A stretch of DNA of 64,000 nucleotides from Macrostomum lignano (lineage: Eukaryota). The notes beneath the pieces were generated by a model that saw only the letters and a list, made by a program, of their open reading frames with translations, ran no database searches and had not been told where the DNA came from. The translations under genes were made by a program, and so were the position numbers. Shown piece by piece: positions 31 through 63,600 of this stretch (its first letter is position 1; every line of letters begins with the position of its first letter). The stretch is taken from the NCBI GenBank assembly GCA_002269645.1, contig NIVC01000219.1:62001-126000 (forward strand). Reading direction: 5' to 3'.

Positions 31-7315
<7,285 letters not shown>

Positions 7316-9230: not shown

Positions 9231-12200
9231 TTGACATTGTCCTATGCTTGACTGGCTGAGAATGTACATGTATTTTGTTGTTGTTGTTGTTGCACATGTA
9301 CAGTATGTGTACACATTACACATTAGTTATTTTTCGCATATCTACTGCATTAATTTAGATAATAAATTTTCCACTGAAAGAACTATATAGCTTTTGCTGA
9401 CAAGGATGGCTTTTACTGAGCTTTACGTACTTTTACGCGTTCATTAAATCTCTGCAATATGTGTGGATCAGTCTTAGCTAATTAAGCAATTATATGTTTC
9501 TCAGTCTTGACTCTTGACTGCCGTCCGCAAGTTCATAGAAAGTCCTCTAATTTCTGTGCAATCAATAATGTTCTCAAACAATATTGCAAAAATGTTATAT
9601 TTTAGAACTGTAGATTGTCGGCAATTGTTAGGCCCTATATTACATAGGATAGCATAGGAGTTAGCCTCAAATAATCAAGAATGGCGTGGTATGAATAATT
9701 GTTAACTACGAGCTCCTGATACCTTTTGTTAAGTTGCTATCGCCAGTCGGTTCCGATCCGACATAGGGCAAACGGGGTGATTCTCATCGAGAGGTTTCGG
9801 AGGTTTTGAGGTTTTTCAGAGGTTTCATTTCGAACAAATATTTTTGCACAAAAACTTTAATACTGCACAAAAATTAAAATCTTACTAAAATTTACTAATG
9901 AATACAAATTTTCTTTAGAAAATAGCTCGGAGGTTTTGGATTCTTTTTAATTTTGCTTCTGATAGGCACGCGCGGAAATTATTTAACTTAGACAACTATT
10001 TTCATGCTTCAGGGTCGTTCTCAAATCTTAGCTTGAATTTATGAACAAAAAATTAAAAAGCATGAAATATTATTCTTTTGGCTTTAAAATTTTCATTTGT
10101 GGCACCACAACCCATATAGGTTTTTTAAACCACAAAATCCTTGAATATTCAATAAATAAGCGTGTTTGTTTATTTTACCGTAAGGATGTATAGACGACAA
10201 AGTTGTTGTCCTACAATATCTAATTAAAATGCATATGAAACACCTAAAAGTAATATTTCGTCTATTTATTTTTTTATTAAGTTACAAAGATAAACACACT
10301 TAAATAGTCATATTTGATTTTATTTTACTATTAAAAAATAGTTACACCACACGTTTTTAACTTCAAAGAAAAAAGTTCTTTTCGGACATCGTTATTGTTA
10401 AACTTGTTTGTCTTCAAGTTCTTAAAAATTCAGAAAATGTAAATGAGATCATCATTATTTTGAATACTTCTTTCTCCGTTTTCTTCAGAAAATTCATTTA
10501 AATTTGTTTTTGATGTAACTTTAAAATGCGAACTCTGTTCAATTTCTAAAAGTATGTAATATTCATGGAGCGCATAAATTGCAAGCTCACCAGGTAGAGA
10601 TGTTAGAATTTAGAAGTTATCTGATAGCTTACTAGCACATGTAGTGTGAAAGTCAGAAACAAGGCAGTTTAGGGTAAATATCGGTATTTCTATTCTAACT
10701 TTAATCTTTCATTGAAATTGCTGTTGGATTGGTTAAATGCATGCAAAGTAAGATCACATACCTTATTTTGGTTTTAGAGTAATTTGGAAAAAATACATGC
10801 ATCTGTGAAATTTATCAAAGCAATGATAATAATGCAACAACATACAGCATATAAAAGTAATCTAAAATGGGTATAACAATACAATAACAATAACAAAATG
10901 ATTTACTGTAATATTAGAACAATTTTTCTGTATGAAAATAATTAAAAAACTGTTTTTCTTTGAAGTTCAACCATTCACCATTTAGTTTCAATAAGCTAAA
11001 TTTAAAAAGAAAAAAATAACAAGCACCAGTGGAAAAATCTCATTTGTAAAATGAAGCACATATTCGAATCCAATTCCTTGATACAAGAATATGAAACAAA
11101 CCACTGATTTGCCAGTACTTATTAGGACTTCGAAACAAATTTTGAGAAGGCTTTGCATAGCTTCAACAGCATTGAATATTTAGAAACTTCAAAAATACAT
11201 AAAAATGTTAGCTTATTTAATATGGAGCTAATATAATGAGCTTTATTTTACTTCAGATTTGAAGTCAGGTTTTGAAGATAATTCAGAAAATATAGTTTAC
11301 TTTTGCATAAATAATACACTGTATGCCTTGATGACTGTCCTTTAAAAGACCTACACGAGATTCAGGAATCGATCCACTGTATGCTTAAAAGACTACAGTA
11401 GCTATTTTCATTATATGCTCTAAAATATTTTTTTAGTATTGTGTGTTGACTCCTACATTGTTTTAGGTTTTTTAACGTGAGAATTTGGCATTTGGGGCAT
11501 CTCACGTAGTAAAGCCTGTCGTCTCGGGTGACTTATAAATTGTACATGTAGCACTGTAGGGTCTTAGAACTGTTTGATGTCTACACGCCCAAATTTTTGT
11601 TATAGAAGTGATAGATAAGAGTTTCTTTGGGTGCTTCTTTGTAGCCGTGACTTTCCTTAGCATGGATCTGTAAAAGCACTAAGGGGCCGCGTGCTTTAGC
11701 ATGTGGACCTTGACCTTACTGCAATGGCATATCCCCATGGGTTAAAGAGGTCAGCTGTAGTCACACCAGATGGCCGGCTGACTGGGATCTATCGCTATAA
11801 CCCAATACTAGACTTAGTTTTTTGTGAGACCATAAGCGCTGAGCTTCTGTACTGCCCCGACTGGGGGACAAACTGACTGACTACAGACTGGTTGAAGAAA
11901 ATTTCTCTCTCTCTTCTTCACCCCTTGTCTGTTCTGATCTTTGATGTACATAGCATTGCTGTCAAAATGATTCCAAGATCGTTTTTCTCCACCCCCGCCC
12001 ATGCATGTTATCCAGTTCGGTGCCGGTACCGAGTAAGTTCCGGTAGAGATTAATTAAGATCTTTCCAATTATAGTTAGTGTGTGGTGCATAAAGTTTTCA
12101 ACTTTTGTGTGGTGTCTTCATTAAAAACCAAGTGGTGTCTTTCAAACCCACCTAAAGAAAACTTTCTATAACCTAAGTCATAGATCGATGCTTTGCTCGT

Positions 12201-12272
12201 AATAAAAAAGCTAAATATTGATAGCATTAAAAACTAAAAATTGATTCCCATGTGAGTTGAGTTCGTTCATGT

Positions 12273-14588
12273 TCAAAGTTCCCTCATCTCAGCCTGTGTG
12301 AGGTCGAAGGCGCAATCAGGTGAGCAATAATAGTTTTGTGGCAGGTTGCTCTTTGGTGGAAAGCCAGCACATTCACAATGATGCCAGGCATCACAGCCAT
12401 CGCATTGAATCCACTGGATTCTCAAACTTGCAGGCTGAATACAGATGGTAGAACTGCAGCGCTCGACCTCAGTCCCCGACTTACCATGACCCCGACCTCG
12501 CTCTTGACCCCTGACACGCTTGCCAGTTGAACACCTTGCGGCACCAGCTGCATCTTTCACCGAAAGCACTGTCTGCTGTCTTGGCATCGGTGGCAAAGCC
12601 AGCGGTTGCCACAGTCTAGCGTTGTGGCACCGACAGTAATCATTAGCTTTTGTGCAGAGACAGACCAGCTCCCGATACAAGATGCCGCTTTCATCAACTC
12701 GGCAGACGTGGTGGCAGTTGGCAATGCCCGGCATTGTAGACAGGTTCACCATCTGCAGCACATTTCCAAACTCCTCGATGTCACTGGTTGTAACCTCGAA
12801 AAGCAAAATCTTTTTCTCTTCATTACTGCCACCGATCATCATTGCCTCCATCATGTCCTGCACCGTGACCACCTGCCTCTGCTCACCTGTAGACACCCGG
12901 TTGTCGCAACGCCGCTTAATGGCCGCTCCCACACCGTCAGCGGCACCCTTGCCGTGGCCAGCCTCGGTGAAGATCCACTGCCAGCGATGGATGCCAATTC
13001 GCCGCAACAGTCGATCAAACAAAAAAATTGTCATTCTGTTGCGGTATTGGCTGCTGGGGGAGTCGGAAATGATGGTGACTCGCTCAACTTCACCTAAGAC
13101 GGATAAAAAGTGCTTCAGTACAGGTAGCAGGTGTGCAACAATTGCTTCCGCCTTCTTGTTGCGGTCCAACGACAGAGAAGCAAATGACACACCTCGCCGT
13201 TCACACACCCCGTAGGCGACACCCTGGTGAATTGTAACCTGCCCGCGGTCTCCAAAATGGGCTGGTTGCGTCTCGCGGTGGTACTTTGCGCCATACGCTT
13301 CGCTAAAATCAATGTGTAGCACCAGGTGGTGCTCGCCCAGATTGTCCTTCAGCTGACGAATAGCGCGAAATTGATGTCGGAGGCGCAGGAAGTGGGCGCC
13401 ATATTTGCGCAAATGTTTCAAAAGTTTTGCTATGGCAAACTCACAGTTCATCGTTTTCTTTACAACCTCCATGCCATTCGCATCAGTCCTACGCTTCCAC
13501 TTGTCGTACACAACAATTGGCTGATTAGCAGCGGCGCCCGCTTTGATAGGAGAAAGCTGAGTGCACTTCTGGCATATATTGTTCAGACAGTTGTACGACT
13601 CGTCTGAGCAAACAATCTTCCGTAGAAGATCATGCTTGTCAGCTGTTGAATCTATTAGCTTTGCTTTACAAATTCCTTCAACCAAAAGGTCGACGTTGGT
13701 GCACAGTGGGCACAGGCACTGTTCTCGATTGCCTACTTTTGGTTGAAGCACATGTGGCGGCTTGTAACGGTAAAATGAAGCCCTGCTACATTTTACAGTC
13801 GGGTGTTCAGACAGAAATTTTTCGTACAAAATCTGCATTCCGTAAAGAAGATAGCGTTTCTGCTTCTTTTCCGACCCTCTGAGCACGGTCTCTTTTCTTC
13901 CAGCAGTCGCCCGTGAGTTTTGGTCCTCACACAAAAAATCCGAAACAGCCATTGGCAACTTTTTCACTTTTGGCGGTGGAAGCGGCTTCAAAATTTTCCC
14001 GGAACAGTGCAATCGCCGGAGCACCTCTTTTCTTACTCCAGGAGTCTCAGCAGTCTCACAAATGCGCCGAACTACGCCTTGCATGTGCTTCTTTCGTTTC
14101 ACTGCTACGACGCTATCCACAATATGCTTGACGGCGGCATCTGAATCGTCAGAGGCACCTTGTCTAGAAACAGCAGCCTTAGATCTTCGCCGCTTCTGCT
14201 GCTTCAGCTTTTTATTTTCTTCTTCCACCTTCTTCAACCGTTCAAGCAAACGCGAAATTTCTTCCTTTTTCTTTCTCATCTCCCGCTGCTTAGCAGCCTC
14301 AGACCGACTCAATCGCTCATTCGCAGTGCTCTTAATCTGTTTAGTATCATTCCTTGAATTAGGCTTAATCTGACGTCTTCTCTGGTCTTTTACTGCGTCC
14401 GATTCCATGATACTTTTTTGTTTGTAATAGAACTTTTTTTGTCTCAATCGATTCTGCTCTTTGAATCCCTCAAGATCAGCGGAACGCTTTTTATTCTCCC
14501 ATTTTTTATAAGACTCGCGAGCGCGCTGCTTCTTTGATGGCATACTAAAGAAGCAGTTGCTTTTGAGCTGAAAGTGAACGGAATTCAT
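12273..14588 (-). CDS. Intact DDD-type transposase (Sola2-like) with a C-terminal PHD finger, 771 aa (756 aa from ATG 14543)
   Basis: Uninterrupted ORF. Basic N-terminus; Cys clusters CLCPLC and CSDESYNCLNNICQKC; putative catalytic motifs HIDFSEAY, ISDSPSSQYRN, GHGKGAADGVG; C4HC3 PHD at 12312-12458. Confidence 0.9.
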   Translation of the reverse strand: MNSVHFQLKSNCFFSMPSKKQRARESYKKWENKKRSADLEGFKEQNRLRQKKFYYKQKSIMESDAVKDQRRRQIKPNSRNDTKQIKSTANERLSRSEAAKQREMRKKKEEISRLLERLKKVEEENKKLKQQKRRRSKAAVSRQGASDDSDAAVKHIVDSVVAVKRKKHMQGVVRRICETAETPGVRKEVLRRLHCSGKILKPLPPPKVKKLPMAVSDFLCEDQNSRATAGRKETVLRGSEKKQKRYLLYGMQILYEKFLSEHPTVKCSRASFYRYKPPHVLQPKVGNREQCLCPLCTNVDLLVEGICKAKLIDSTADKHDLLRKIVCSDESYNCLNNICQKCTQLSPIKAGAAANQPIVVYDKWKRRTDANGMEVVKKTMNCEFAIAKLLKHLRKYGAHFLRLRHQFRAIRQLKDNLGEHHLVLHIDFSEAYGAKYHRETQPAHFGDRGQVTIHQGVAYGVCERRGVSFASLSLDRNKKAEAIVAHLLPVLKHFLSVLGEVERVTIISDSPSSQYRNRMTIFLFDRLLRRIGIHRWQWIFTEAGHGKGAADGVGAAIKRRCDNRVSTGEQRQVVTVQDMMEAMMIGGSNEEKKILLFEVTTSDIEEFGNVLQMVNLSTMPGIANCHHVCRVDESGILYRELVCLCTKANDYCRCHNARLWQPLALPPMPRQQTVLSVKDAAGAARCSTGKRVRGQERGRGHGKSGTEVERCSSTICIQPASLRIQWIQCDGCDAWHHCECAGFPPKSNLPQNYYCSPDCAFDLTQAEMREL

Positions 14589-14713
14589 TTATTTATTTGA
14601 TAAATGTATAGGTTTTGAGATTTAACTTCTTAGACTTATTGACATAAATCTACGTTTAAGCTTCAAGCAGTGAGCTGATGTGGATAAATTTTTAATACTT
14701 GATGTGGCGTTAT

Positions 14714-15079
14714 CAGTAGCGTCGCCACCGGGGGGGCAGTGCAGGGGGACAAGCCCCCAGTAAAATGCTTTGTCCCCCACCATGCATTCCTTCGTTGACC
14801 TGTTATGGAAAAAAATAATGTTGCTTCAGGACGACAAAAATAGTGTCTGCGGCGCGAAAATGGATCCTGTGGTTCTAAAATGTGTGCCAGCGGTTCTAAA
14901 ATGAATGCCAGCAGTGCTGAAGTGGTGCAGCTGAGGCACTAAAACGAGTGCCTATGGCGCTTAAATGATAGTTGACAACACATTCCGAAAATAATATACA
15001 GCAGAAATTTAGTCGTGTACATGCTGAATTCTTGGCTTCGTCCCCCCCTTCAACCATAGAATCCATGGCGACGTCCCTG
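14714..15079. mobile_element. hAT-type MITE (366 bp) upstream of the transposase
   Basis: Imperfect TIR cagtagcgtcgcca / tggcgacgtccctg; 8-bp flanks ggcgttat / ggcataat (6/8 match). Confidence 0.6.
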
Positions 15080-17249
15080 GGCATAATTATTCGTTTCTGA
15101 TGTACTATTTTTACCATTGCCAGTAGTAATTTTAAAAAATGTTTCTATTTTCTTTTTGTCGTTGGTATGTAACAAAAGTCCGAATCTATTACCTAAAAAT
15201 TGAGATCACTAATCATGCATAATCGATCTAATTAGAAAGTAAGAAGCATAGAAATGTTATTTTAGTAAACTCTAGAAAATTAGTTTCATAATTATAACTA
15301 TCATTTCATACATAGATGCAAGACTGTTTTCTCATGGTATTTCTATAAAAATGCACGGCATCATTTTTATTCATCTTTTATTCTTTCCTGCTTCTTAGCA
15401 TATTAATTTTTGTTTCAGACTACTTAAAATGTACTATAAAATATTAAAAAATCAGTCTAAAAATCTTCTTTTGAGTAAAAACAACTAACAACACCCAGTT
15501 TAAATTAGATCAGTATAAATTTAAGTACAAAGCGTAAAATTCTGTTGTTTTTCATCAACAGATTGGGCATTTAAATGGCCAAGTTTATTTTAGATGTACA
15601 AAAATACCTTCCAAAAACCTAACAATGTGCTGAGAATTTTTTAATACTTTACTAGGGGCATAGAGGCAGTACTTTTTTTCAAGCCACAGATGAAGGCTTT
15701 GAAACAGAACTACTCTGGTACTGCTTGTTTTATTGTAGACAGATTAATCTGTATTTGTTAGGTTAATTTTGTGCTATTGAAAAACTAAAAACTCGTGATT
15801 TAATTAACATAATTCTTACAATTTTAAATGACACTGAATAATTTGATACTATATTGTAAATTGTGACCATCTTTCTTAATAACAGATGAAAACACACCTC
15901 TCTTTTGATTCTATCAGCTGAACGAATGAACTGAAAGTTAGATTTTTTCATCCCATACAGTGTCACGCTTCTAGAAAAGTCAAAATAAAAACGTCAATTC
16001 AACAAGCCAAAGGTTTTAATGGCTTTCAGGTTGTAAGAAATCAAGATATAAATAATATTTGATAGTTTTACTTTTTGATACGACCACGTGAGAAAAATAT
16101 TGTATCTATAAAATGGGTATTACGCTATAAAGCGATAATCCAAAAAATAAATTAAAAAACGAAGATGCGCAGACTCTTGACATTTACTCAAGAATTTTAA
16201 ATAAAAATGACTGTTTATAATCATAAACGTTTATTTTTAATAGTATTGTCGAGCCACATGAAAAAATAAGCCCTCAATTTAAGGCGGATTAAAAAAAATT
16301 TGCTTAACTGCTTACGTCGAAACTTTGAGAACGACCCTTCAAATAAAAGTGGTTTTTTAAAACACTACGCAACACAACACACTGGTAGGCTAATATCAGT
16401 GCCATTGGCATTTACATTCAAGGTGCATAAATAAAATAAAAATATTCGAATTGAAGGCGCTGCTTGAAATATACTGAAAACATATAGACAGCTGTTTCAT
16501 CCGTTTCCCGTTTTTTTACTTTTGAGTGCTGCATACCATTTTGCATTCGAATTCTGTTATGACATTGATGTGATGTTATGTTATGTTATGACATACTGCC
16601 GCACAGAAGTAAATAGCAGAATTATTGTTGTCTCAATGTTTTTTATAAATATTTGAGGGCCTGGAATTACAAGTATGCATTTTACTTTTAACTACTTAAA
16701 GCAGAGCATTTTACTTTTTATCATTAAATTAATTTCAATTGCTAAATGCTATTAGCTTTTCTCTCATAAATAACACTAGTTGCACAACTGTTACTGCTGA
16801 CAAAAGCTCTAACACATTAGAGTCAGTTCTTATGCAAACAAAATGCTTGCAGTAAGACTTTGAACATGTATTGCACTACCTTTGTTTGATGCTAAAAATC
16901 TATGTTGAGCAATAAACTAGATAGCTGATACCAATATATTTACTAGAGTTAAAACTAAAAAGTCATTGGACACATTTTTGGCATTGTTTATTTTAAAATA
17001 ATATAATTTCTTCAATATAAATGTATTGGCATCTTTAAAGATTTCAAGAATAAATGTATAGGAAAATCATTATGTTTCTTGACATTTGAAATTGATTGTT
17101 TATGAAAAGTTATAGATGAAAGTAATCAATACCTTTTATTTCAACATGCCTTATTTCAGCTGCCAATACCATGCCTGAACTACCGCTTGCATGGTCTCCT
17201 GCCTGCATTTTGAGCCTGTACAGGCCAACAATGCTTCATGTTTGTCTAA

Positions 17250-49100: not shown

Positions 49101-51813
49101 AATTTTGCTGCATCCAGCAGAAATGAACTATAAACATATAGCTCCTGGCTTAAAGCACTTCATGGTTTGAGAGTGCCTTTAAAAAAGATAGTACGTTAGT
49201 AGTCAAAAGTTTTGACGACAATGCAGTTTTGGTCATCAACACTTTTTAAATGGTGTTCAATTTAAGAGCTCAGCAGTGGTTCCGGAGATAACTTATCGAG
49301 ATTCGAATTAATTTTGCATCGATTCTTTTCAGCGTAGCCTCAACAAACTCAGACGAGGCGTTCGCGGTGATCGAGCTGCACGATTTGCATTTCGAAGTCA
49401 CCCTCGGCATGGGCGGATTCGGTCGGGTGGAACTGGTTTGCGGCGTCCGTTTTTATTTTTTTTTAATTAGTTGCAATACTTAAAGCTGACAAAGTGAAAA
49501 TACTATTCATCGAATCCAAAAGGTGACGTGGAAGGCCAACCCGGATGTGACATTCGCTTTGAAGTGCTTAAAGAAGCAGCATATTGTACACACACGACAG
49601 CAGGACCACATCTACTCGGAGAAGAATATCCTGATGAGTCTGAAGTCTAACTTTATTTGCAAGTGAGCACTCCGGAAAACCATTGAAATTCAAAGCTACA
49701 ACTACTCGCGACTTTACATATTTGAATCAACCCCCACAACTGCAGGCTATACAAGACATTTAAAGACCGAAAGTACGTCTACATGCTGATGGAAGTCTGT
49801 CTGGGAGGCGAACTCTGGACTATGCTGAGAAATGTGTAAGCTGTGTGGAATGTTCCTCAATTTAACTACTGGCAATCGCAGTTAGAAGTGATAATTCCAA
49901 TCAATTCAACTTCGCTTCGGAAATATTTTGCAAACGCCTTATCTTCTTATTCTAGAGGAAACTTTGATGAACCAACTACAAAGTTTATCATGGCCTGCGT
50001 ACTTGAAGCGTTCCAGCATCTGCACGAGCGCGGCATAATCTACAGAGATTTGAAGCCAGAGAATCTGCTCCTGGATCATCGGGGATACGTCAAGCTGGTA
50101 CGGTATCGTGATGCGCAGTGTTTACAGTTATATTCAATTTACCGGATGGTAGAAATTTTTACCAACCAAACAATCCGCATCCAGTGCGATTTCGGGTTTG
50201 CGAAAAAAATTGGCCACGGCAAGAAGACTTGGACTTTCTGCGGCACGCCGGAGTACGTCAGCCCGGAGATCATCTTGAACAAAGGTCACAGCTTTCCGGC
50301 GGACATCTGGCAGATTGGAGTGCTGCTGTTTGAGCTCATTAGTGGCAGGTGAGGGTTCTTTCAACGTCAGCTCGGCGGTGGATTTCGACACTACCTTGAG
50401 AATTAAGCTCTAGTCTACCCTGGATGCGCAGGCTATGATAGCAGCTCTGCGCTTTAGCTGTGTGGTACAAATACAGAGTGGTAGTTCGAGGCTCCCACAT
50501 TGCCCAAACTGTACAAGCTGTAGAGGACAAGTACAAGCGTTCATAGACCTTCGGAATCACCGCGCAATTGCAACGCGGCTGTGTGCCTTTGGCCGCAAAC
50601 CTAGCCACTCTGAAATGGGGCCATGCAGGCAATGTTCCATTGTATATTTGTTCTTTTGATATATACTCAGCAACATCGAAAAGCCGCCACTCTATGCACC
50701 AGTGAGCAATTTTTCTTGGACTATTCTGAAATAAAAGATAAGAGATAACTGATCGGGGTAGCGTTAGTCCGTCCAACCCTCGCGCACCGCCCCCCCCCCC
50801 CAACTTCATTTCCCAACGCAAGTCTGCCGCGGCGTAGCAAGTTGTGTCACCCGCAAAGATTGAGAGACTTTACCTGCACTCTCAAAAGTGGCGACCACAG
50901 ACGGAATCTTCTGCGATGGTGTCTTTTCGATGTTGCTGAATATACAAGTTAAACTTTAGAAGAATGGAAAATAAACCAGTAATTCTTCGGATTTGATCTA
51001 AGGATGGTTTCGTCTCGTATCTTAATGTCGGAATTTCTAAGCATCCACCGAACTTTCCTGTGACTCCAATGAGATAATGGCTTGATATTGTCTCACTGTT
51101 AGACACGATCTCAATAGGCAATTGAAGTTATCCAACCACACCCCGCCTCGATCTGTTTAACAGTCCGCCATTCAACGCCCCGGATTCCATGAAAATCTAC
51201 AACGTGATCCTTCGCGGCATCGAGGCTGTAGACTTTCCGGCTAGCATGAGCAAGGCTGCTCAGGGCCTCGTGAAGAAATTGTGCCGCGAGTCGCCCCAGG
51301 AGCGACTTGGCAGCGGAATTGGCGGCATCGCCGACATAAAAAAGCACAAATGGTTTCAAGGCTACGATTGGACTGGATTGTCAAGGATGTCGCTTGTGCC
51401 GCCACTGTCTCCGAAGGTAAATAAGGCAATTAGCTATTGACTGGTAGCTGAGAGCTGTTATCGTGTCTGACTCTCTTTGAACATTCTAAACATTAATCTG
51501 GGGCCTTTGCACAAGGTGCCCAGGAGCCAGCGGAATGGGCAGGATGGGCTGGTTTATGGGACCGACGTCGACAAGTGCGTTGCGCTAGGTAGGACGACCA
51601 CAGCCCTCCCGTGAATAGTTATGTTTACCTACCTACAAGTGAATTGGGATTAGCAAACGTTCAATCAGTATTTTTTTACGATTTAAATTATCCTTGTTTG
51701 TTTTATCTGTCTGGCAGATTAACAGTCCAACTGACGCGTCAAACTTTGACAAGTTTGAGTCGCGATCAAGCATTCCTCCGGATGAAACGTCTGGATGGGA
51801 CAAGGACTTCTAG
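43256..51813 (+). CDS. PRKG1: cGMP-dependent protein kinase (PKG; egl-4/foraging-like), 16 exons, 775 aa
   Basis: Exons 43256-43827, 45125-45291, 45652-45765, 46567-46672, 46961-47024, 47115-47192, 48456-48550, 48647-48712, 48804-48881, 49333-49435, 49523-49662, 49746-49835, 49956-50097, 50185-50348, 51164-51416, 51718-51813; all phases compatible (2328 nt). Leucine zipper; pseudosubstrate [10 protein letters not shown]; two cNMP sites ([21 protein letters not shown]...RRTA); kinase [27 protein letters not shown]; tail SNFD...SGWDKDF. Orthology to PRKG1 versus PRKG2 is not resolved. Confidence 0.96.
43850..44060. repeat. Degenerate GTGAC-rich repeat at the 5' end of PKG intron 1
   Basis: Recurring gagtgactgagtgacaatatt. 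Confidence 0.8.
44275..44702. repeat. 14-bp purine-rich minisatellite in PKG intron 1
   Basis: Unit ggagacagggagag, ~30 copies. Confidence 0.96.
45365..45620. repeat. 24-bp minisatellite in PKG intron 2
   Basis: Unit gtgactactagagtgctgatcaga. Confidence 0.93.
45980..46290. repeat. Pyrimidine-rich low-complexity tract in PKG intron 3
   Basis: cccttcacttctctcc motifs. Confidence 0.85.
47215..48345. repeat. 34-bp minisatellite in PKG intron 6, split by a MITE
   Basis: Unit ggtgactcacttagggacactggggagggtaggt on both sides of 47583-48113. Confidence 0.95.
47583..48113. mobile_element. hAT-type MITE (531 bp)
   Basis: Perfect 13-bp TIR cagtggtgtgatt / aatcacaccactg; perfect 8-bp TSD ctggggag (47575-47582, 48114-48121); subterminal tttcgcgcc repeats. 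Confidence 0.92.
50664..50942. mobile_element. Tc1/mariner-type MITE (279 bp) in PKG intron 14
   Basis: TIR tactcagcaacatcgaaaag / cttttcgatgttgctgaata (1 mismatch), TA flanks. Confidence 0.8.
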
Positions 51814-55531: not shown

Positions 55532-57579
55532 TAGGGGTCCCAATCCTGGAATCCTGAGTTCCCAGGATCCCCAGGATCCCAGCTTTTTGTTACTGTTCGG
55601 GATCTTGGGATTAGGGGTCTGGGATCCCGGTGCACTAAGTGCACTGTCTACAATCTTGGGCTGGTTCGAATTACTGGATCACTGCCAGCTGATTGTCTCA
55701 AAGAAATGTTGATGCAATGCATTTCCGAGTTTGGGCTTAATGCTAAGGACATCATAGCCTGCACCACTGATGGAGCTTCGCTAATGCGGAGGGTCAGTCG
55801 ATTTTGAGCACCAACTGTGCTAGTGCTATGCTCATGGTGTGCATCTTGCTGTTTGCGACGTCCTGTACATCAAGCGATCAAGTGAGAAGGAGCAGGCCGT
55901 TGATAGGGATAGTCATCATCATAACACTGAGGGCAGCAATACCAACAGCAACAGTGTCAGTGAGGAGGAGCATGACAATGATGAGGCAGATGCAGTGAAC
56001 TTTGATCAGCTAATTGCACCTCCGAGGCCCTTGACGATAGAACTGTTGAATATAGTGAAGATTGTCAGGAGAGTGGTGAAGCTGTTTTGCTCCAGCACTT
56101 TTTGCAATGATAAGCTGTAGAAGTTTGTGAAGGAGGATTTTGGAAAGAAACTGTCACTGTTACTTGACACACCAACGCGGTGGAACTCCCTTGTATCAAT
56201 AATGGAATGCTTTGTCCTGCTACACAAACAAGTGCACAAGGCACTTGTGTGCTTAGAGATGCCACTGCCATTTATGCAGCAGACTGTCAAGCAGGCAAAG
56301 GAAGTAGCCGATGCGTTGAAACCACTGGAGCTGATCATCCAGACATTGTCCTGGCATGATTGCAACCTGAGCATGGCTGAAGTTGCTGTTGGATTCGCAA
56401 TTGAAGAGCTGAAGGGACTGGACTCATCCCTGTCCAAGCAGCTTGGCTACACCCTAGAGAGTCACATCAGCGAGCGAAGAAGCAGCATCACCATTGCTGT
56501 GAATGTCCTATCACGTGGCAGACAGACGAAGACAATCTCTGAGTTCAATGCTACGAAGTATCTTTTAGTCTTGATGGCAGACAAGTTGAACCTGAGCGCC
56601 AGTGCTAGCAAAGATCCATAGGCAGCTGATTGCGTGGAAATTGGAGCCAACAAGGAGATCGTTAGCAGCGTACCTCAGGCAACAATGGAGGAACAACTGC
56701 GACTGCCATTAGAGGGTTAGCACTCAGGCCAAGGGCAAGAAGTCGTGCTGAATAAGGAAAATCCCATTGAGGCAAGGGTTGGGTGTGAGCTGGAATTCCT
56801 GCGGGCTACAGGGCAGCAAGGGGAGATGCTAGAGCTGCTGTACTAATCATTGTTGGCCATTCCAGCAACCAGTGTTGAAGCTGAGCATGCCTTTTCTGCT
56901 GCAGGCATCCTCCTGACAAAAGTGAGGTCCAAGCTGAGCGACACGACACTCTCCAAGCTTGCCCTGTTAAGAGCCCACTTTGCTAAATGCTAACTAGACC
57001 AGACAAAGCTTGTGTTGCTGACTGCTATAGTGCCAACGTCATGTAGAATAAGCAACAATATGGACAACTTGCAATTCATTCATGGCTTTTTGTGCTGTTG
57101 CAACAACCCCAATTTGTGAATGCTCATAATTTTTACAATTGAACTGTCACCTGTCATTGTCACTTGCCAGAGTTGAAAGTTTCCATGTCATAGAAACAGT
57201 GCAGTTGCAAATTTCAATTACTGCTGCTGGTAGCCTGGAACTTGTATTGCATTGCATGATTTGCAATACAAAATATATTGCATTGATGGATAGTTGAAAT
57301 AGGAATGAATGTGACAATTTTACAAGGAATAAGTGAGTGACCGAGGATAAGTGAAATGAAATAAAATAACTTAACTTTTTTATCAATATCAATGCAGTAT
57401 AAGCTAGAATAGAAAGTAGAAACCCAAATGATGCTCAAATTAGTTGAGAAATTTGTTTTGTGGGCAATGGAAAGCTTCCCATCAAGTTGTTTATTCAATC
57501 CAAGGATTGGCTCAGGATCCCATGATTGGGTCAATTTTTTTGTCCAGGATTATAAAATGTCCAGGATTTGGGACCCCTA
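55532..57579 (+). mobile_element. Defective hAT transposon (2048 bp) with a broken transposase
   Basis: TIR taggggtcccaatcctgg / ccaggatttgggaccccta; perfect 8-bp TSD ttgcaaat (55524-55531, 57580-57587). Remnants IACTTDGAS, CYAHGVHLAV, TPTRWNS, IPATSVEAEHAFSAAG...RSKLSD (hAT dimerisation domain) carry stops and frameshifts; the N-terminus is missing. Confidence 0.93.
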
Positions 57580-60617: not shown

Positions 60618-63600
60618 TCAGGCGGTGAAGGATTTCAGCATGTTGTAAAACTCGTCCACAGTCGGCAGGTCAACGTCTTCGAGTTTCAGCTCGGGCAGCT
60701 CCGGACCAGACAGTCTGCGCTGAACCAACTCTTTGTAGCCTGCTGCGAGGTCTGTGCGAGCTGTGGGAGGCGGGGGGTCACTGCTGAGAGGTCTGTGCGA
60801 GCTGTGGGAGGCGGGGGGTCACTGCTGAGAGGTTTGTGCGAGCTGTGGGAGGCGGGGGGTCACTGCTGAGAGGTCTGTGCGAGCTGTGGGAGGCGGGGGT
60901 CACTGCTGAGAGGTCTGTGCGAGCTGTGGGAGGCGGGGGTCACTGCTGAGAGGTCTGTGCGAGCTGTGGGAGGCAGGGGGGTCACTGCTGAGAGGTCTGT
61001 GCGAGCTGTGGGAGGCAGGGGGGTCACTGCTGAGAGGTCTGTGCGAGCTGTGATAGGCAGGGGGTCACTGCTGAGAGGTCTGTGCGAGCTGTGGGAGGCG
61101 GGCAGGGGAATCACTGCTGAGAGGTCTGTGCGAGCTGTGATAGGCAGGGGGGTCACTGCTGAGAGGTCTGTGCGAGCTGTGGGAGGCGGGCAGGGGGGTC
61201 ACTGCTGAGAGGTCTGTGCGAGCTGTGGGAGGCAGGCAGCTAGGGTCAGCTAGGGTCAGCTAGGGTCAAAGGCATTATACTCAGTCCAAGTCAATACAAA
61301 CTGCATGCATTCATCAAAGGTTTGAGGGCGGGCAGGGGGTCAGCTAAGGTCAAAGGCATTATACTCAGTCCAGGTCAATACAAACTGCATGCATTCATCA
61401 AAGGTTTGAGGGCGGGCAGGGGGTCAGCTAAGGTCAAAGGCATTATACTCAGTCCAGGTCAATACAAACTGCATGCATTTATCAATGGTTTGAGGGCGGG
61501 CAGGGGGTCAGCTAGGGTCAGCTAGGGTCAAAGGCATTATACTCAGTCCAGGTCAATACAAACTGCATGCATTTATCAAAGGTTTGAGGGCGGGCAGGGG
61601 GTCAGCTAGGGTCAAAGGCATTATACTCAGTCCAGGTCAATACAAACTGCATGCATTCATCAAAGGTTTGAGGGCGGGCAGGGGGTCAGCTAGGGTCAAA
61701 GGCATTATACTCAGTCCAGGTCAATACAAACTGCATGCATTCATCAAAGGTTTGAGGGCGGGCAGGGGGTCAGCTAGGGTCAAAGGCATTATACTCAGTC
61801 CAGGTCAATACAAACTGCATGCATTCATCAAAGGTTTGAGGGCGGGCAGGGGGTCAGCTAGGGTCAGCTAGGGTCAAAGGCATTATACTCAGTCCAGGTC
61901 AATACAAACTGCATGCATTCATCAATGGTTTGAGGGCGGGCAGGGGGTCAGCTAGGGTCAGCTAGGGTCAAAGGCATTATACTCAGTCCAGGTCAATACA
62001 AACTGCATGCATTCATCAATGGTTTGAGTCCAACCAGAACTCACAAGCGATGATCTTAGCGCAGCTGTGAGACACGTGACAGTCCGTGTCCCAGCTGAAG
62101 GTCAGCTGTGTGCCCTGAAGAATCGGAACATCCCTTGGCGTGGTCAGCCCTAGGGCTTGCAGGCATCCCAGGGGATCAGGAGAGAACCTGGCAGCCAGCT
62201 GCGGGCAGTTGGAGTACGGTCTGAACTCCGGAGCGGCAACCCGACTGACAGGCCGCCGAGGGTCTGCACCGCAGCTAATCAGTTTGCTCAGACGGGAATG
62301 CGAATGCTCATCGTAGGATTGAATGCTCAGCAGCTGCAGCAGAGTCAGCCCGCTGAACCGCCAGAGTCTGCTGCTGACACCCCAGCTGAGTTCGGAGTCG
62401 ATGTCTTTGTTGCAAGCCTTCAGCACTGGATTGCCTGTTGCGGTTGGTTTTGGTGCATTTGGAGCATTTAGCGAGAATATGCGCTACTTTCTACTTGTGA
62501 GTAGGCGAGTCAGCATCTTAAATCTTAACTGGCTAAATTTGAATTCATTTTTATCAGCCATAAGAGCAGAGCAAACAGATGGAAGGAGAGACCGAAGGTC
62601 TGCGTTATGAATTCAAAGCTTGGATTGCGTGTGGCACACTTACTCAAGCTGCTCTGCAAACATGTGGGTGGCGGATGTGGAGCAGCTAAGATTGAGATAC
62701 GAACAGAGCGGCAATAAAATCAGAGACATTTATGGAACCGGATGTCCTTATATTATTTACTGAGTTGACTGAATTTACTCCTGTGCAAACTTAAACTCGC
62801 ATTGGTTATAAAATCTGCAACGTCCTTCTTTAGTGTTGAGTTGCTTCTGCCGCAGCAAAGGCTAGGAGAGGAGAGCAAAGCAGATTCGAAATAGAAGGAT
62901 ATTTGACTATTTTTCAGCCAATGGCAGCACAGACGGTGGGGCCCTGTCTGACAAAGCCCCGCAGTGCAGAAGGATAGGAGAGCTGATAAGGCCGCACAAA
63001 TGTGCGTCTCTTATGTATAGCGACTGGAAGAGAGGCAGCGGGAGAGAGAGGCTGGTAGCACTTGGGTTCTGTTAGTCACCGCATTCGTTAGCTGGCTGGG
63101 GGCCCTCAGAACAGAACAGAAGACTCTCAGAACCCGACATAAACAAAAATACAAAACCGGAGGGTAATTTTGCTATTTTTGGCATCTGCACGACCTGCAC
63201 TTTGCTTGTGCTGGTTGTTGAATTCGGGACTAGGATATTAAAAAGCATCATTTTAGCATTTATTTCGGTTGCCACGTGGTGTAGGGCGATAAATTGTGGA
63301 GATTAAAGATGCACGCACGCGGAAAATTCCAGAAAAAAATGAAAATGCAGAAAAGAAAGATTTGCAATTTCATTTTTGCAACGTCATTTTACAATGAGAT
63401 TGCATTAAGCCGTGAGGCCAAGGACCCCTGAGACAGCCACTTCAGCTGTGAGGCCAAGGACCCCTGAGACAGCCACTACACCTGTGAGGCCAGGGACCCC
63501 TGAGATAGCCACTTCAGCTGTGAGGCCAAGGACCCCTGAGACAGCCACTTCAGCTGTGAGACCAAGGACCCCTGAGCCAGCCACTTCAGCTGTGAGACCA

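What the first reader, a model, noticed from the sequence alone, without database searches (positions are those of the whole stretch)
12273..14588. Intact DDD transposase fused to an H3K4me3-reader-type PHD finger: a candidate chromatin-guided transposon
Seen: a 771-codon uninterrupted ORF, perfect TIRs and TSD, and C-x4-C-x12-C-x2-C-x4-H-x2-C-x14-C-x3-C at 12312-12458, joined by a basic G/R-rich linker. Established: in ING and BPTF PHD fingers the (M/W)I-x-C-D...W-(F/Y/H)-H segment forms the H3K4me3 aromatic cage, and RAG2 uses a PHD to steer the RAG1 transposase-derived recombinase. Here the segment is QWIQCDGCDAWHH. Inference: a probably active element that reads histone marks in cis to choose targets, a single-polypeptide analogue of RAG1/2 targeting and a possible transgenesis tool for this lineage.
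Basis: partly seen in the sequence, partly recalled or inferred. Interest (0 to 1): 0.72.

Follow-up and report, generated by a model that had tools for sequence, protein, structure and literature searches.

The report
Sola2 transposon carrying a histone-reader finger
This is an intact-looking 6.3-kb "cut-and-paste" jumping gene of the known Sola2 type from an unidentified animal. Its transposase ends in a conserved zinc finger closely resembling the fingers that recognise the active-promoter histone mark H3K4me3, so it is a good but untested candidate for chromatin-guided insertion.

Summary
A 771-codon ORF lies at 12273-14588 (-). It sits inside a 6326-bp element (10012-16337) with perfect 14-bp inverted ends (GGGTCGTTCTCAAA) and a perfect 4-bp target duplication (TTCA). 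The C4HC3 pattern lies exactly at 12312-12458, behind a G/R-rich linker.

- **Ends validated.** A relative with 47% identical transposase (L004) has almost the same termini.
- **Classification.** The enzyme is Sola2. The family HMM scores 99 bits on Sola2-1_HM, against 13 bits for Sola1 and 6 bits for Sola3. It is not CMC/Chapaev. The modelled core has the RNase H strand order, with D427/D509/D551 in the catalytic positions.
- **The finger.** Its best solved-structure matches are KDM5B and KDM5A PHD3 (E 8e-8 and 5e-7). It shares their unusual C-x4-C start and both cage tryptophans.
- **Conservation.** The finger is intact in one relative about 50% identical, and remnants survive in two decayed ones. 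It evolves as slowly as the catalytic core. It was absent from the other 168 of 170 family proteins examined.

Histone reading and target steering are inference only. PHD-transposase fusions are already described in Ginger1, Mutator/Rehavkus and piggyBac. I therefore rate this a new variant of a known kind, of moderate interest.

The parts
10008..10011 (.). Left target-site duplication, TTCA
   Evidence: Identical 4 nt directly flank both TIRs. Relatives also show 4-bp TSDs: GTAT in L005 and ATAT in L024.
10012..10025 (+). Left terminal inverted repeat, GGGTCGTTCTCAAA. This is the 3' end of the element relative to the transposase gene.
   Evidence: Perfect 14-nt inverted match with 16324-16337. 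About 35 nt of this end are conserved in the L004 element.
10012..16337 (-). Whole Sola2 element, 6326 bp, with a single long ORF
   Evidence: The TIRs and TSD delimit it. No second copy is in the window. It holds no other ORF of 130 aa or more apart from antisense ORFs inside the transposase gene.
12273..14588 (-). Transposase ORF, 771 codons. The probable true start is Met16 at 14541-14543.
   Evidence: Relatives begin with the equivalent basic motif, M..KK..ER.RR.
14568..14578 (-). Probable 3' splice acceptor (ttcactttcag) just upstream of codon 8
   Evidence: P0001 is identical to the ORF from residue 8 and differs upstream of it.
13989..14543 (-). N-terminal basic, largely helical region (aa 16-200)
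   Evidence: K/R/E-rich sequence. The AF2 model has long helices at residues 19-138. The function was not tested.
13554..13961 (-). Conserved N-terminal Cys-rich region (aa 210-345), with nearly invariant F218, D222, S225, G230, C291, C293, C327, C334, C339 and C342. It is the presumed DNA-binding or zinc module.
   Evidence: Conservation across 150 family members. The role is inferred.
13569..13967 (-). 399-nt in-frame segment bounded by GT...AG (aa 208-340), absent from the transcript-like relative P0001. It is a cryptic or alternative intron.
   Evidence: Exact blocks 8-207 and 341-691 are shared with P0001. The segment starts GTGAAA and ends GCCAG.
12891..13346 (-). RNase H-like DDD catalytic core (aa 415-566). 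D427 is at 13308-13310, D509 at 13062-13064 and D551 at 12936-12938, the last inside GHGKGAADG.
   Evidence: - Conservation.
- hhalign to Sola2_DFa-2: probability 95.8%, E 7.5e-9.
- HMM against Sola2-1_HM: 99 bits.
- AF2 strand and helix order, with pLDDT 80-95.
- Foldseek hits to RNase H-like nucleases.
12624..12662 (-). C-x-C...C-x-C-H motif closing the transposase core (aa 643-655)
   Evidence: The consensus 'LSCxC...CxC' is conserved in the family. The function was not tested.
12462..12584 (-). Linker (aa 669-709) with a G/R-rich stretch at 12474-12524
   Evidence: Composition. The (RG)n linker is shared by clade members P0002, P0003, P0025 and P0026. It is the least constrained segment, with pN 0.475.
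12514..12515 (-). GT of a splice donor (cgt|gtcagg) after codon 691, used in P0001 to skip the linker and PHD
   Evidence: P0001 diverges exactly after residue 691. The sequence is shown.
12312..12458 (-). PHD finger (aa 711-759) of KDM5-PHD3 type. Cage-equivalent W726 lies at 12411-12413 and W735 at 12384-12386.
   Evidence: - PDB phmmer E 7.7e-8 and 5.1e-7, with aligned Trp residues and the C-x4-C start.
- Conserved in P0026/L003, with remnants in L001 and L002.
- pN 0.32, against 0.29 in the core.
16324..16337 (-). Right terminal inverted repeat. This is the 5' end relative to the transposase gene.
16338..16341 (.). Right target-site duplication, TTCA

Best explanation
**Shown**
- Window 10012-16337 is an autonomous Sola2-group DNA transposon in a metazoan genome.
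- It has 14-bp perfect TIRs, a 4-bp TSD and one transposase gene on the minus strand.
- The transposase has, in order: a basic helical N-terminus, a conserved Cys-rich region, an RNase H-fold DDD core (D427, D509, D551), a G/R-rich linker and a C-terminal PHD finger.
- The nearest solved relatives of the finger are the H3K4me3-binding PHD3 fingers of KDM5A and KDM5B. Both cage tryptophans are conserved.
- The finger was already present in the ancestor of a sub-clade now about 50% diverged, and it is as constrained as the catalytic core.

**Inferred**
- The N-terminal and core parts bind the GGGTCG... ends and carry out cut-and-paste transposition with a 4-bp staggered target cut.
- The flexible linker lets the PHD dock on the H3K4me3-marked tails of nucleosomes at active 5' gene ends.
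- That docking tethers, and possibly activates, the transposition complex there. Integration would then be biased toward open, transcribed chromatin, the same logic as RAG2-PHD with RAG1 but in one polypeptide.
- The finger was probably captured from a host KDM5-like gene.
For: **Element and family**
- ORF, TIRs and TSD.
- Homologous termini in L004, and GGGT... termini with 4-bp TSDs in more distant relatives.
- Sola2 assignment: 99 bits, against 13 and 6 bits for Sola1 and Sola3; hhalign 95.8% to Sola2_DFa-2.
- The RNase H order in the AF2 model places the three Asp residues canonically, with RNase H-like Foldseek hits.
- The family is large, with 4942 representatives at E <= 1e-3.

**Finger**
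- Best PDB matches are KDM5B and KDM5A PHD3, sharing C-x4-C, W-(V/I)-Q-C-D-G and W-x-H.
- W1625 and W1635 form the K4me3 cleft in KDM5A (PMC9172573).
- The finger is near neutral (3 K/R against 4 D/E), unlike what a DNA-binding finger would suggest.
- It is intact, with all 8 ligands and both Trp, in P0026. Remnants lie behind a stop in L001 and are truncated in L002.
- Against L003, synonymous sites are saturated (pS 0.78-0.89), while pN is 0.32 in the PHD, 0.29 in the core and 0.475 in the linker.

**Recent life**
- 551 residues are 100% identical in P0001, an independent public sequence.

**Host and precedent**
- The host is an animal, so canonical H3K4me3 chromatin is expected.
- RAG2 localises to H3K4me3 through its PHD (PMC5175335).
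Against: - There are no binding or integration data. One insertion cannot show a target preference.
- This copy sits in 27-30% GC sequence, with no recognised promoter identified next to it.
- The AF2 model of the finger is unreliable, with pLDDT below 50.
- Pfam PHD is below its gathering score.
- The best-studied transposase with a PHD-like C-terminal finger, piggyBac, uses it to bind transposon-end DNA (PMC5861402, PMC8086355).
- Sister element L004 has nearly the same TIRs and no PHD, so the finger is dispensable for the basic reaction.
- The window copy has Ala431 where at least 90% of the family has Asn.
- The only transcript-like sequence splices the PHD away.
Confidence: 0.5

Rival explanations
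1. The C-terminal finger is a transposon-end or DNA-binding module, like the piggyBac cysteine-rich domain. It would help recognise subterminal sequences or assemble the synaptic complex, and would not read histones.
For: - The piggyBac CRD is a PHD-like cross-brace finger at the same C-terminal position. It is essential and binds a repeated motif in the transposon ends (PMC5861402; PMC8086355).
- The adjacent RG-rich linker could contact nucleic acid.
Against: - The finger resembles bona fide histone-reading PHDs far more than anything else, and keeps both cage Trp.
- It is not basic, with 3 K/R against 4 D/E.
- No repeated subterminal motif stands out in this element.
- L004 keeps nearly identical termini without the finger.
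Confidence: 0.15
2. The finger binds chromatin or a protein partner but does not choose targets. It could act as an allosteric switch, licensing catalysis only in certain nuclei or cell states, or it could recognise another ligand such as unmodified or differently modified H3, or a methylated non-histone protein. It could also mediate oligomerisation or stability.
For: - Purifying selection shows a function but not which one.
- CRDs of domesticated piggyBac transposases bind H3 tails with differing or no methyl specificity (PMC8086355).
- The non-core PHD of RAG2 also has inhibitory and regulatory roles (PMC12337333 abstract).
Against: A two-Trp cleft plus the C-D acidic residue is the signature of K4me3 readers. 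Tethering is the simplest consequence of such binding.
Confidence: 0.2
3. The copy is a recently dead element and the finger is a passenger exon with no present function. The intact ORF merely reflects its young age.
For: - Ala replaces a near-invariant Asn beside the catalytic D427.
- The related copies L001 and L002 are decayed.
- P0001 shows splicing that removes essential parts.
- No second copy lies in the window, and the TIR pattern has no hit in JGI metagenome contigs.
Against: - The finger is retained, with all ligands and cage residues, across about 50% protein divergence, with pN equal to that of the core.
- The same N-to-A change occurs in P0023.
- The TIRs and TSD are perfect.
- 551 of 551 shared residues are identical in an independent sequence.
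Confidence: 0.12
4. It is not a mobile element but a domesticated host gene derived from a transposase fused to a chromatin reader.
For: Transposase-derived genes with chromatin domains exist. The ORF is single-copy in this window.
Against: - It is bounded by TIRs homologous to those of another element, plus a perfect TSD.
- Close relatives occur as multiple, partly decayed paralogues in one metagenome sample, which is typical TE behaviour.
Confidence: 0.03

Closest known systems
Sola2 DNA transposons (Sola superfamily, Bao et al. 2009; references Sola2-1_HM and Sola2_DFa-2)
   Same: - Homologous DDD core: 99 bits and E 1.4e-32 to the Sola2-1_HM core fragment; hhalign 95.8% to Sola2_DFa-2.
- The same motif series: DF(S/A)ENY ... 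(S/T)DG..QY(R/K)N ... WNF.E.GHGK...D.
- 4-bp TSD and short TIRs (PMC3627910).
   Different: - It carries a C-terminal KDM5-PHD3-like PHD finger on an RG-rich linker.
- Most sampled relatives instead end in an unannotated small beta-barrel domain (61 of about 108 long tails) or, in one case, a Ulp1 protease.
- The TSD here is TTCA, whereas the amoebozoan Sola2 elements have AT-rich AWWT.
KDM5A/KDM5B (JARID1A/B) PHD3 fingers
   Same: - Best sequence match among all solved structures.
- Same ligand spacing, including the unusual C-x4-C first pair.
- Same W-(V/I)-Q-C-D-G and W-x-H segments holding the two tryptophans that clamp H3K4me3.
   Different: - Identity is only about 35-40%.
- The last pair is C-x3-C.
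- It is attached to a transposase instead of a demethylase.
- Binding was not tested, and the AF2 model of this part is not usable.
PHD-bearing DNA transposases already described: Ginger1-9_HM (Ulp1+PHD), some Mutator transposases, Rehavkus
   Same: A eukaryotic cut-and-paste transposase with an appended PHD finger (PMC2836005; PMC6446971).
   Different: - They belong to other superfamilies (integrase-like Ginger; MULE).
- Those reports list the domain without showing the type or function of the finger.
- No paper in the searchable library links Sola or Sola2 with a PHD.
piggyBac C-terminal cysteine-rich domain and its domesticated relatives (PiggyMac, Tpb2p)
   Same: A cross-brace zinc finger at the C-terminus of a DDD transposase. 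In Tpb2p and Pgm it contacts histone H3 tails (PMC8086355; PMC3861120).
   Different: - There is no homology of the catalytic domains.
- The piggyBac CRD binds TIR DNA.
- Pgm has a different, C1-like fold.
- Tpb2p prefers heterochromatic H3K9me3/K27me3, not an active mark.
RAG1/RAG2 (Transib-derived recombinase with the RAG2 PHD)
   Same: The functional logic is the same: an H3K4me3-reading PHD brings a DDE-type cleavage enzyme to active chromatin (PMC5175335).
   Different: - RAG is a two-protein system.
- RAG1 is Transib-related, not Sola.
- The RAG2 PHD is a divergent finger, and there is no sequence relationship to this transposase.
Chromodomain-bearing LTR retrotransposon and Maverick integrases (from my own knowledge, not tested here)
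   Same: A mobile-element integrase fused to a histone-methyl-lysine reader that biases integration.

Membership tests
Sola2 group of the Sola superfamily | Transposase core homologous to reference Sola2 transposases, and closer to them than to Sola1 or Sola3 | tested here: met
   - Family HMM against published core fragments: Sola2-1_HM 99.0 bits (E 1.4e-32), Sola1-1_AP 13.2 bits, Sola3-1_HM 5.7 bits (sequences from PMC3985635 supplement).
- hhalign to Sola2_DFa-2: probability 95.8%, E 7.5e-9.
Sola2 group of the Sola superfamily | DDD catalytic triad on an RNase H-like fold | tested here: met
   - D427, D509 and D551 are invariant or nearly so.
- In the AF2 model they lie on beta1, just after beta4, and at the start of the helix after beta5, with pLDDT 80-95.
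- Foldseek returns only RNase H-like nucleases at the top, weakly (E about 1e-3).
- The three-dimensional clustering of the three Asp residues was not measured.
Sola2 group of the Sola superfamily | 4-bp target-site duplication | tested here: met
   TTCA lies on both sides. Relatives show GTAT (L005) and ATAT (L024). L004 matches 3 of 4. The 4-bp TSD is stated for Sola2 in PMC3627910.
Sola2 group of the Sola superfamily | Terminal inverted repeats | tested here: met
   A 14-nt perfect TIR, homologous to the 23-nt TIR of L004. Distant relatives start GGGT(C/G)(A/G)TTC.
   No CMC reference sequence was compared. No Pfam transposase family hit the protein. The decisive Sola2 match makes this assignment unnecessary.
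PHD finger | Eight zinc ligands in C4HC3 order with cross-brace-compatible spacing | tested here: met
   C711, C716, C729, C732, H737, C740, C755 and C759. The same spacing as KDM5A/B PHD3 holds for the first six ligands.
PHD finger | Significant sequence similarity to established PHD fingers | tested here: met
   PDB phmmer gives E 7.7e-8 and 5.1e-7, and the matches listed are almost all PHD fingers. The Pfam PF00628 score of 17.6 is below the 24-bit cut-off for the window protein, and 22.6 bits for P0026.
PHD finger | PHD fold in three dimensions | tested here: inconclusive
   The AF2 full-length model has pLDDT below 50 for residues 669-771, because too few finger-bearing sequences were in the alignment.
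H3K4me3-reading PHD subclass | Aromatic cage residues at the positions used by solved readers | tested here: met
   W726 and W735 align with the two Trp residues of KDM5A/B PHD3, which are W1625 and W1635, the K4me3 cleft (PMC9172573). Both are conserved in P0026.
H3K4me3-reading PHD subclass | Measured preferential binding to H3K4me3 peptides or nucleosomes | not testable with these tools
   This needs a peptide pull-down, ITC or array experiment.
Active autonomous transposon | Intact coding capacity, intact ends and near-identical copies | tested here: inconclusive
   - The ORF, TIRs and TSD are intact.
- 551 residues are identical in the independent sequence P0001.
- Against this: N431A at a position at least 90% conserved, no second copy in the window, and the exact protein is not on record elsewhere.
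Active autonomous transposon | Demonstrated excision, integration or insertion polymorphism | not testable with these tools
   This needs a transposition assay or population resequencing of the unidentified host.

The most novel reading that the evidence does not exclude
A lineage of Sola2 transposons has captured a KDM5-type H3K4me3 reader and uses it, within a single polypeptide, to aim cut-and-paste integration at active promoters. This would be a natural, compact, chromatin-guided DNA transposase. More broadly, the C-terminus of Sola2 transposases may be an exchangeable targeting socket. Most relatives carry a small beta-barrel there, one carries a Ulp1 protease, and another carries a possible independent PHD with an AT-hook.
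Probability: 0.33. Interest if true: 0.72.

Novelty: new variant of a known kind. Interest (0 to 1): 0.5.

Why it matters
How DNA transposons choose their targets is mostly unexplained outside a few model elements. Engineered transposases are given chromatin- or DNA-binding domains to bias integration.

A natural transposase that has kept a histone-mark reader under selection would give three things:
- A direct test case: wild type against cage mutants, with integration sites compared to H3K4me3 maps.
- An evolutionary parallel to RAG2-PHD/RAG1, and to retrotransposon integrases that carry chromodomains.
- Possibly a compact promoter-seeking vector for enhancer or promoter trapping.

It also adds a clean, fully delimited Sola2 reference element. 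The ends, TSD, catalytic residues and splice signals are all defined, for a superfamily with no solved structure and no Pfam model.

Tried and rejected
- **CMC/Chapaev assignment.** Not pursued after the decisive Sola2 match.
- **PHD as standard for the family.** Rejected. Only P0026 among 170 representatives matches the finger (phmmer E 2e-16; the next best is 0.24). A loose C4HC3 regular expression finds just one more, P0126, a weak and probably independent PHD-like tail (PDB E about 0.03-0.1).
- **More finger-bearing relatives.** A word-indexed search with the finger alone found no candidates.
- **More copies through the TIR.** A 24-nt degenerate TIR pattern had 0 hits in JGI metagenome contigs. 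The exact protein is not on record.
- **Protein-based metagenome scan.** It returned only relatives about 30-35% identical. These were useful for TIR and TSD rules but lacked the finger.
- **The common C-terminal domain of distant relatives as a Tudor domain.** The model is a confident small beta-barrel (pLDDT about 80). Foldseek places it only weakly (E 0.01-0.05) next to Sm/LSm proteins, so I call it an SH3/Sm-like barrel and not a Tudor domain.
- **Subterminal repeat arrays.** Such possible transposase-binding sites are obvious in distant relatives (for example GTAACAGAGATTAC in L005-L015) but not evident in this element.
- **Ka/Ks.** Synonymous sites are saturated, so only pN and pS could be compared between segments.
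- **Host identification.** An OGFOD3 exon shows only that the host is a metazoan. Mites, fishes, molluscs and a tunicate are all about 60% identical. Rfam and tRNA scans found nothing.
- **Source papers.** The original Sola paper (Bao 2009) and Yuan & Wessler 2011 are not held in the library.
Full report
**1. What is in the sequence**

The minus strand carries an uninterrupted ORF of 771 codons at 12273..14588. The 41 residues before it (669-709) hold 7 Gly, 6 Arg and 3 Lys, with the stretch GKRVRGQERGRGHGKSG.

A search for inverted words on the two sides of the ORF found one long perfect match:
- GGGTCGTTCTCAAA lies at 10012-10025, against its reverse complement at 16324-16337.
- Each copy is directly flanked by TTCA (10008-11 and 16338-41).
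- These are the only two matches to the 14-mer in the whole window, even with two mismatches allowed.
- Only about 0.02 such matches would be expected by chance in the space searched.

The element is therefore 10012-16337 (6326 bp). It holds no other substantial ORF, and no second copy lies in the window.

**2. Independent validation of the ends**

The closest relatives of the protein come from one JGI metagenome sample. One of them, L004, has a transposase 47% identical to the window's. It is bounded by a 23-nt inverted repeat, CAGGGTCGTTCGCAAATCTTGGG. That repeat differs at one position from the window's terminus, and about 35 nt of the two left ends align.

More distant relatives from a metagenome scan (about 30-35% identity) begin GGGTCATTCTACAG..., GGGTGATTCTACAG... 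or GGGTTTC.... Where the flanks are readable they show 4-bp duplications: GTAT in L005 and ATAT in L024. The termini and the 4-bp TSD are therefore family properties, not coincidence.

**3. Which transposase**

Pfam recognises no transposase domain. An exhaustive phmmer search nonetheless finds 4942 representative relatives, so this is a large but uncurated family.

A 150-sequence alignment shows near-invariant D427 (HIDFSEN), D509 (SDGP.TQYRN) and E542/H545/G546/K547/D551 (EAGHGKGAADG).

The family was compared with published reference sequences:
- A profile of the family aligns with Sola2_DFa-2 (sequence from the supplement of PMC3627910) at 95.8% probability, E 7.5e-9, over all three motifs.
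- An HMM of the family was scored against the RNase H-core fragments published by Majorek et al. (PMC3985635 supplement).

| Reference fragment | Score | E-value |
|---|---|---|
| Sola2-1_HM | 99.0 bits | 1.4e-32 |
| Sola1-1_AP | 13.2 bits | 1.3e-6 |
| Sola3-1_HM | 5.7 bits | 2.4e-4 |

An AlphaFold model built on 22 sequences is confident for residues 210-660 (pLDDT mostly 80-95). It shows the canonical RNase H order, with D427 at the end of beta1, D509 just after beta4 and D551 at the start of the helix after beta5. Foldseek against the PDB returns, weakly (E about 1e-3 to 5e-2), only RNase H-like nucleases at the top. These are herpesvirus terminase nuclease, Argonaute PIWI domains, P element transposase and Mos1. 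'DDD transposase' is thus supported.

One blemish: the window copy has Ala431 where at least 90% of the family has Asn. Relative P0023 has the same change.

**4. The finger**

A phmmer search of the last 70 residues against all PDB sequences puts KDM5B PHD3 (2ma5, E 7.7e-8) and KDM5A PHD3 (2kgg/2kgi/3gl6/5c11, E 5.1e-7) first. Next come an Arabidopsis PHD protein and the fingers of CFP1/Spp1, PHF20, PHF8, PHF13, PHF23, PHF2, DIDO1, MLL5 and BPTF, among others.

The alignments show that the unusual C-x4-C first ligand pair is shared with KDM5 PHD3. So are W-(V/I)-Q-C-D-G and W-x-H. In KDM5A these two tryptophans, W1625 and W1635, form the cleft that holds trimethyl-lysine 4 of H3 (PMC9172573). 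The finger is near neutral in charge.

Limits:
- Pfam PHD is sub-threshold (17.6 against 24 bits).
- The AF2 model of this part is unusable (pLDDT below 50).

**5. Is the finger an accident of this copy?**

No.
- P0026 (contig L003, about 50% identical) ends in CAAANCSRPQGKTVQWVQCDGCNGWQHWQCAGITAAKEVPLRFFCSPEC. It has all eight ligands and both tryptophans.
- In L001 a stop codon in the RG linker is followed in frame by VCSSGSCIRPQGRVQWIQCDGC..., and after a deletion by ...FCCSPEC.
- In L002 the finger is cut off after ...QQWIQ by a simple repeat.
- L004 and P0061 have the RG-rich linker but end differently (...SISFQ).

Between the window and L003, synonymous sites are saturated (pS 0.78-0.89). 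The non-synonymous proportions are 0.29 in the catalytic core, 0.32 in the finger and 0.475 in the linker. The finger has therefore been kept under about the same constraint as the enzyme.

It is not a general Sola2 feature, however:
- Of 170 family proteins, only P0026 matches it (E 2e-16; the next best is 0.24).
- One other, P0126, ends in a weak and apparently independent PHD-like motif preceded by an AT-hook-like RRGRPKG.
- Of about 108 relatives with long C-terminal tails, 61 share a different, unannotated domain. It models as a small beta-barrel with weak Sm/SH3-like matches.
- One relative carries a Ulp1 protease.

The C-terminus of this family thus looks like an exchangeable accessory position.

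**6. Activity and expression**

Several points favour a young element. The ORF is intact, and the TIRs and TSD are perfect. A public protein fragment, P0001 (metaclust), is 100% identical to ORF residues 8-207 and 341-691.

P0001 is informative in another way:
- The segment it lacks (residues 208-340, 13569-13967) begins GTGAAA and ends GCCAG in the DNA.
- Its identity starts right after a ttcactttcag acceptor, before codon 8.
- Its identity stops at a cgt|gtcagg donor after codon 691.

It therefore looks like a spliced, probably chimeric, transcript of an identical copy. It continues into a repeat that also occurs at 30-32.7 kb of the window, and then into an RPB3-like sequence. This isoform lacks the conserved Cys-rich region and the whole linker and PHD, so it cannot encode the full transposase.

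The real protein most likely starts at Met16, as relatives do. Whether the splicing is regulatory is unknown.

The exact protein is not on record elsewhere, and the TIR pattern has no hit in JGI metagenome contigs.

**7. Host and context**

An exon at 26593-27051 encodes an OGFOD3 orthologue that is 55-63% identical to those of mites, fishes, molluscs, birds and a tunicate. The host is an animal not closely represented in the database.

The element lies in AT-rich sequence (27-30% GC), beside a GC-richer block to its left. I could not identify a gene or promoter next to it. One insertion says nothing about target preference.

**8. Mechanism**

Shown: this is a Sola2 cut-and-paste element whose transposase carries a selected, KDM5-PHD3-like finger on a flexible RG-rich linker.

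Inferred:
- The enzyme binds the GGGTCG ends, excises the element and inserts it with a 4-bp stagger.
- The finger docks on H3K4me3 tails at active 5' gene ends and so tethers or licenses the complex there.

I put about 0.5 on this whole statement. The identification itself is above 0.9, and the targeting part is about one in three.

The main rivals, with their evidence and refuting results, are given in the Rival explanations section. In brief, they are:
- a piggyBac-CRD-like role in binding the transposon ends;
- a regulatory or protein-binding role without target choice;
- a dead element with a passenger exon.

**9. Comparison with what is known, and verdict**

The element is a member of Sola2; all testable defining features are met. 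Its finger is a member of the PHD family, with the cage residues of H3K4me3 readers. Binding itself is untested.

Fusing a PHD finger to a DNA transposase is not new:
- Ginger1-9_HM and some Mutator transposases carry one (PMC2836005).
- Rehavkus carries one (PMC6446971).
- The PHD-like piggyBac CRD is another example.
- RAG2-PHD/RAG1 provides the functional precedent (PMC5175335).

I found no paper in the searchable library that connects Sola or Sola2 with a PHD finger. Repbase itself could not be consulted.

I therefore rate it a new variant of a known kind. It is a well-delimited, probably young Sola2 element with a conserved histone-reader-type finger, and it offers a specific, cheap-to-test hypothesis of chromatin-guided transposition. 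Interest is moderate, at 0.5.

Noticed in passing
window 13569-13967 (-), 14568-14578 (-), 12514-12515 (-); protein P0001: A public protein fragment is 100% identical to ORF residues 8-207 and 341-691. It lacks an in-frame 399-nt GT...AG segment and leaves the ORF at a GT donor just before the linker and PHD. This looks like alternative or cryptic splicing of the transposase mRNA, yielding a product without the Cys-rich region and the finger. It may be regulatory, as with the P element, or it may be a chimeric read-through transcript.
   Followed up: partly
relatives P0004, P0005, P0007, P0009-P0011, P0013, P0014, P0018, P0021, P0022 (C-terminal ~110 aa); alignment A5: Most Sola2-like relatives end in a shared, Pfam-less domain. 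It models confidently (pLDDT about 80) as a small beta-barrel with weak Sm/SH3-like structural matches. Its role is unknown, and it occupies the position that the PHD has in the window's clade.
   Followed up: partly
P0022 (residues 825-923); P0126 (residues ~780-847): Other accessory modules appear on Sola2-like transposases. One is a Ulp1 protease domain (PF02902, E 4e-11), as in Ginger1 and KI-MULEs. Another is a weak, apparently independent PHD-like tail preceded by an AT-hook-like RRGRPKG.
   Followed up: partly
loci L005-L015, L018, L020, L023-L026: Distant relatives carry many copies of a 13-16-nt subterminal motif in both orientations near both ends, for example GTAACAGAGATTAC or GTCATTACC(G/A)T. 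These are likely transposase-binding sites. No comparable array is evident in the window element.
   Followed up: partly
window 29690-30712 vs 32030-33052, with tandem repeats between (30050-32693): A 1024-bp inverted repeat, 99.7% identical, encloses about 1.3 kb of tandem repeats. The translation of these repeats matches the tail of P0001 (HLQQMTPGDYEHPDANFSSF...).
   Followed up: partly
window 4098-6817 vs 60740-62725: A large inverted duplication (about 1.5 kb at 95% identity, plus repeat-rich extensions) lies near the two ends of the window. It includes identical-looking 136-aa ORFs at 4396-4806 (+) and 62016-62426 (-).
   Followed up: partly
window 2018-2428, 27066-27625, 28145-29103, 33071-35903, 37297-38060, 40485-40989, 44258-44821: There is an unusually high density of long micro- and minisatellite arrays. 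Examples are the arrays that read 'SVCL' when translated, spanning nearly 3 kb at 33-36 kb. They generate many spurious long ORFs.
   Followed up: no
window 25697-27051 (+): Two exons of an OGFOD3-like 2-oxoglutarate/Fe(II) oxygenase gene. The best database matches are 55-63% identical in many animal phyla, which shows that the host is a metazoan without close relatives in the database.
   Followed up: yes
window 43205-43831 (+) and 49843-50352 (+): A protein kinase catalytic-domain exon (Pfam Pkinase, E 3e-33) lies downstream of a coiled-coil N-terminal exon. By eye it resembles a cGMP-dependent protein kinase gene.
   Followed up: partly
window 56127-56621 (+): An ORF containing '...TPTRWNSL...', reminiscent of the C-terminal region of hAT transposases or ZBED proteins. 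It had no Pfam hit at E <= 0.01.
   Followed up: partly
window 14857-14912, 14712-14780 and 15040-15080, 11862-11872 vs 14769-14779: The non-coding parts of the element contain three small features. One is a 21-nt unit repeated 2.7 times. Another is G/C-rich segments with short inverted matches (GCGTCGCCA / TGGCGACG). The third is an 11-nt inverted pair, TGGGGGACAAA. These could be remnants of a nested small element or regulatory sequence.
   Followed up: no
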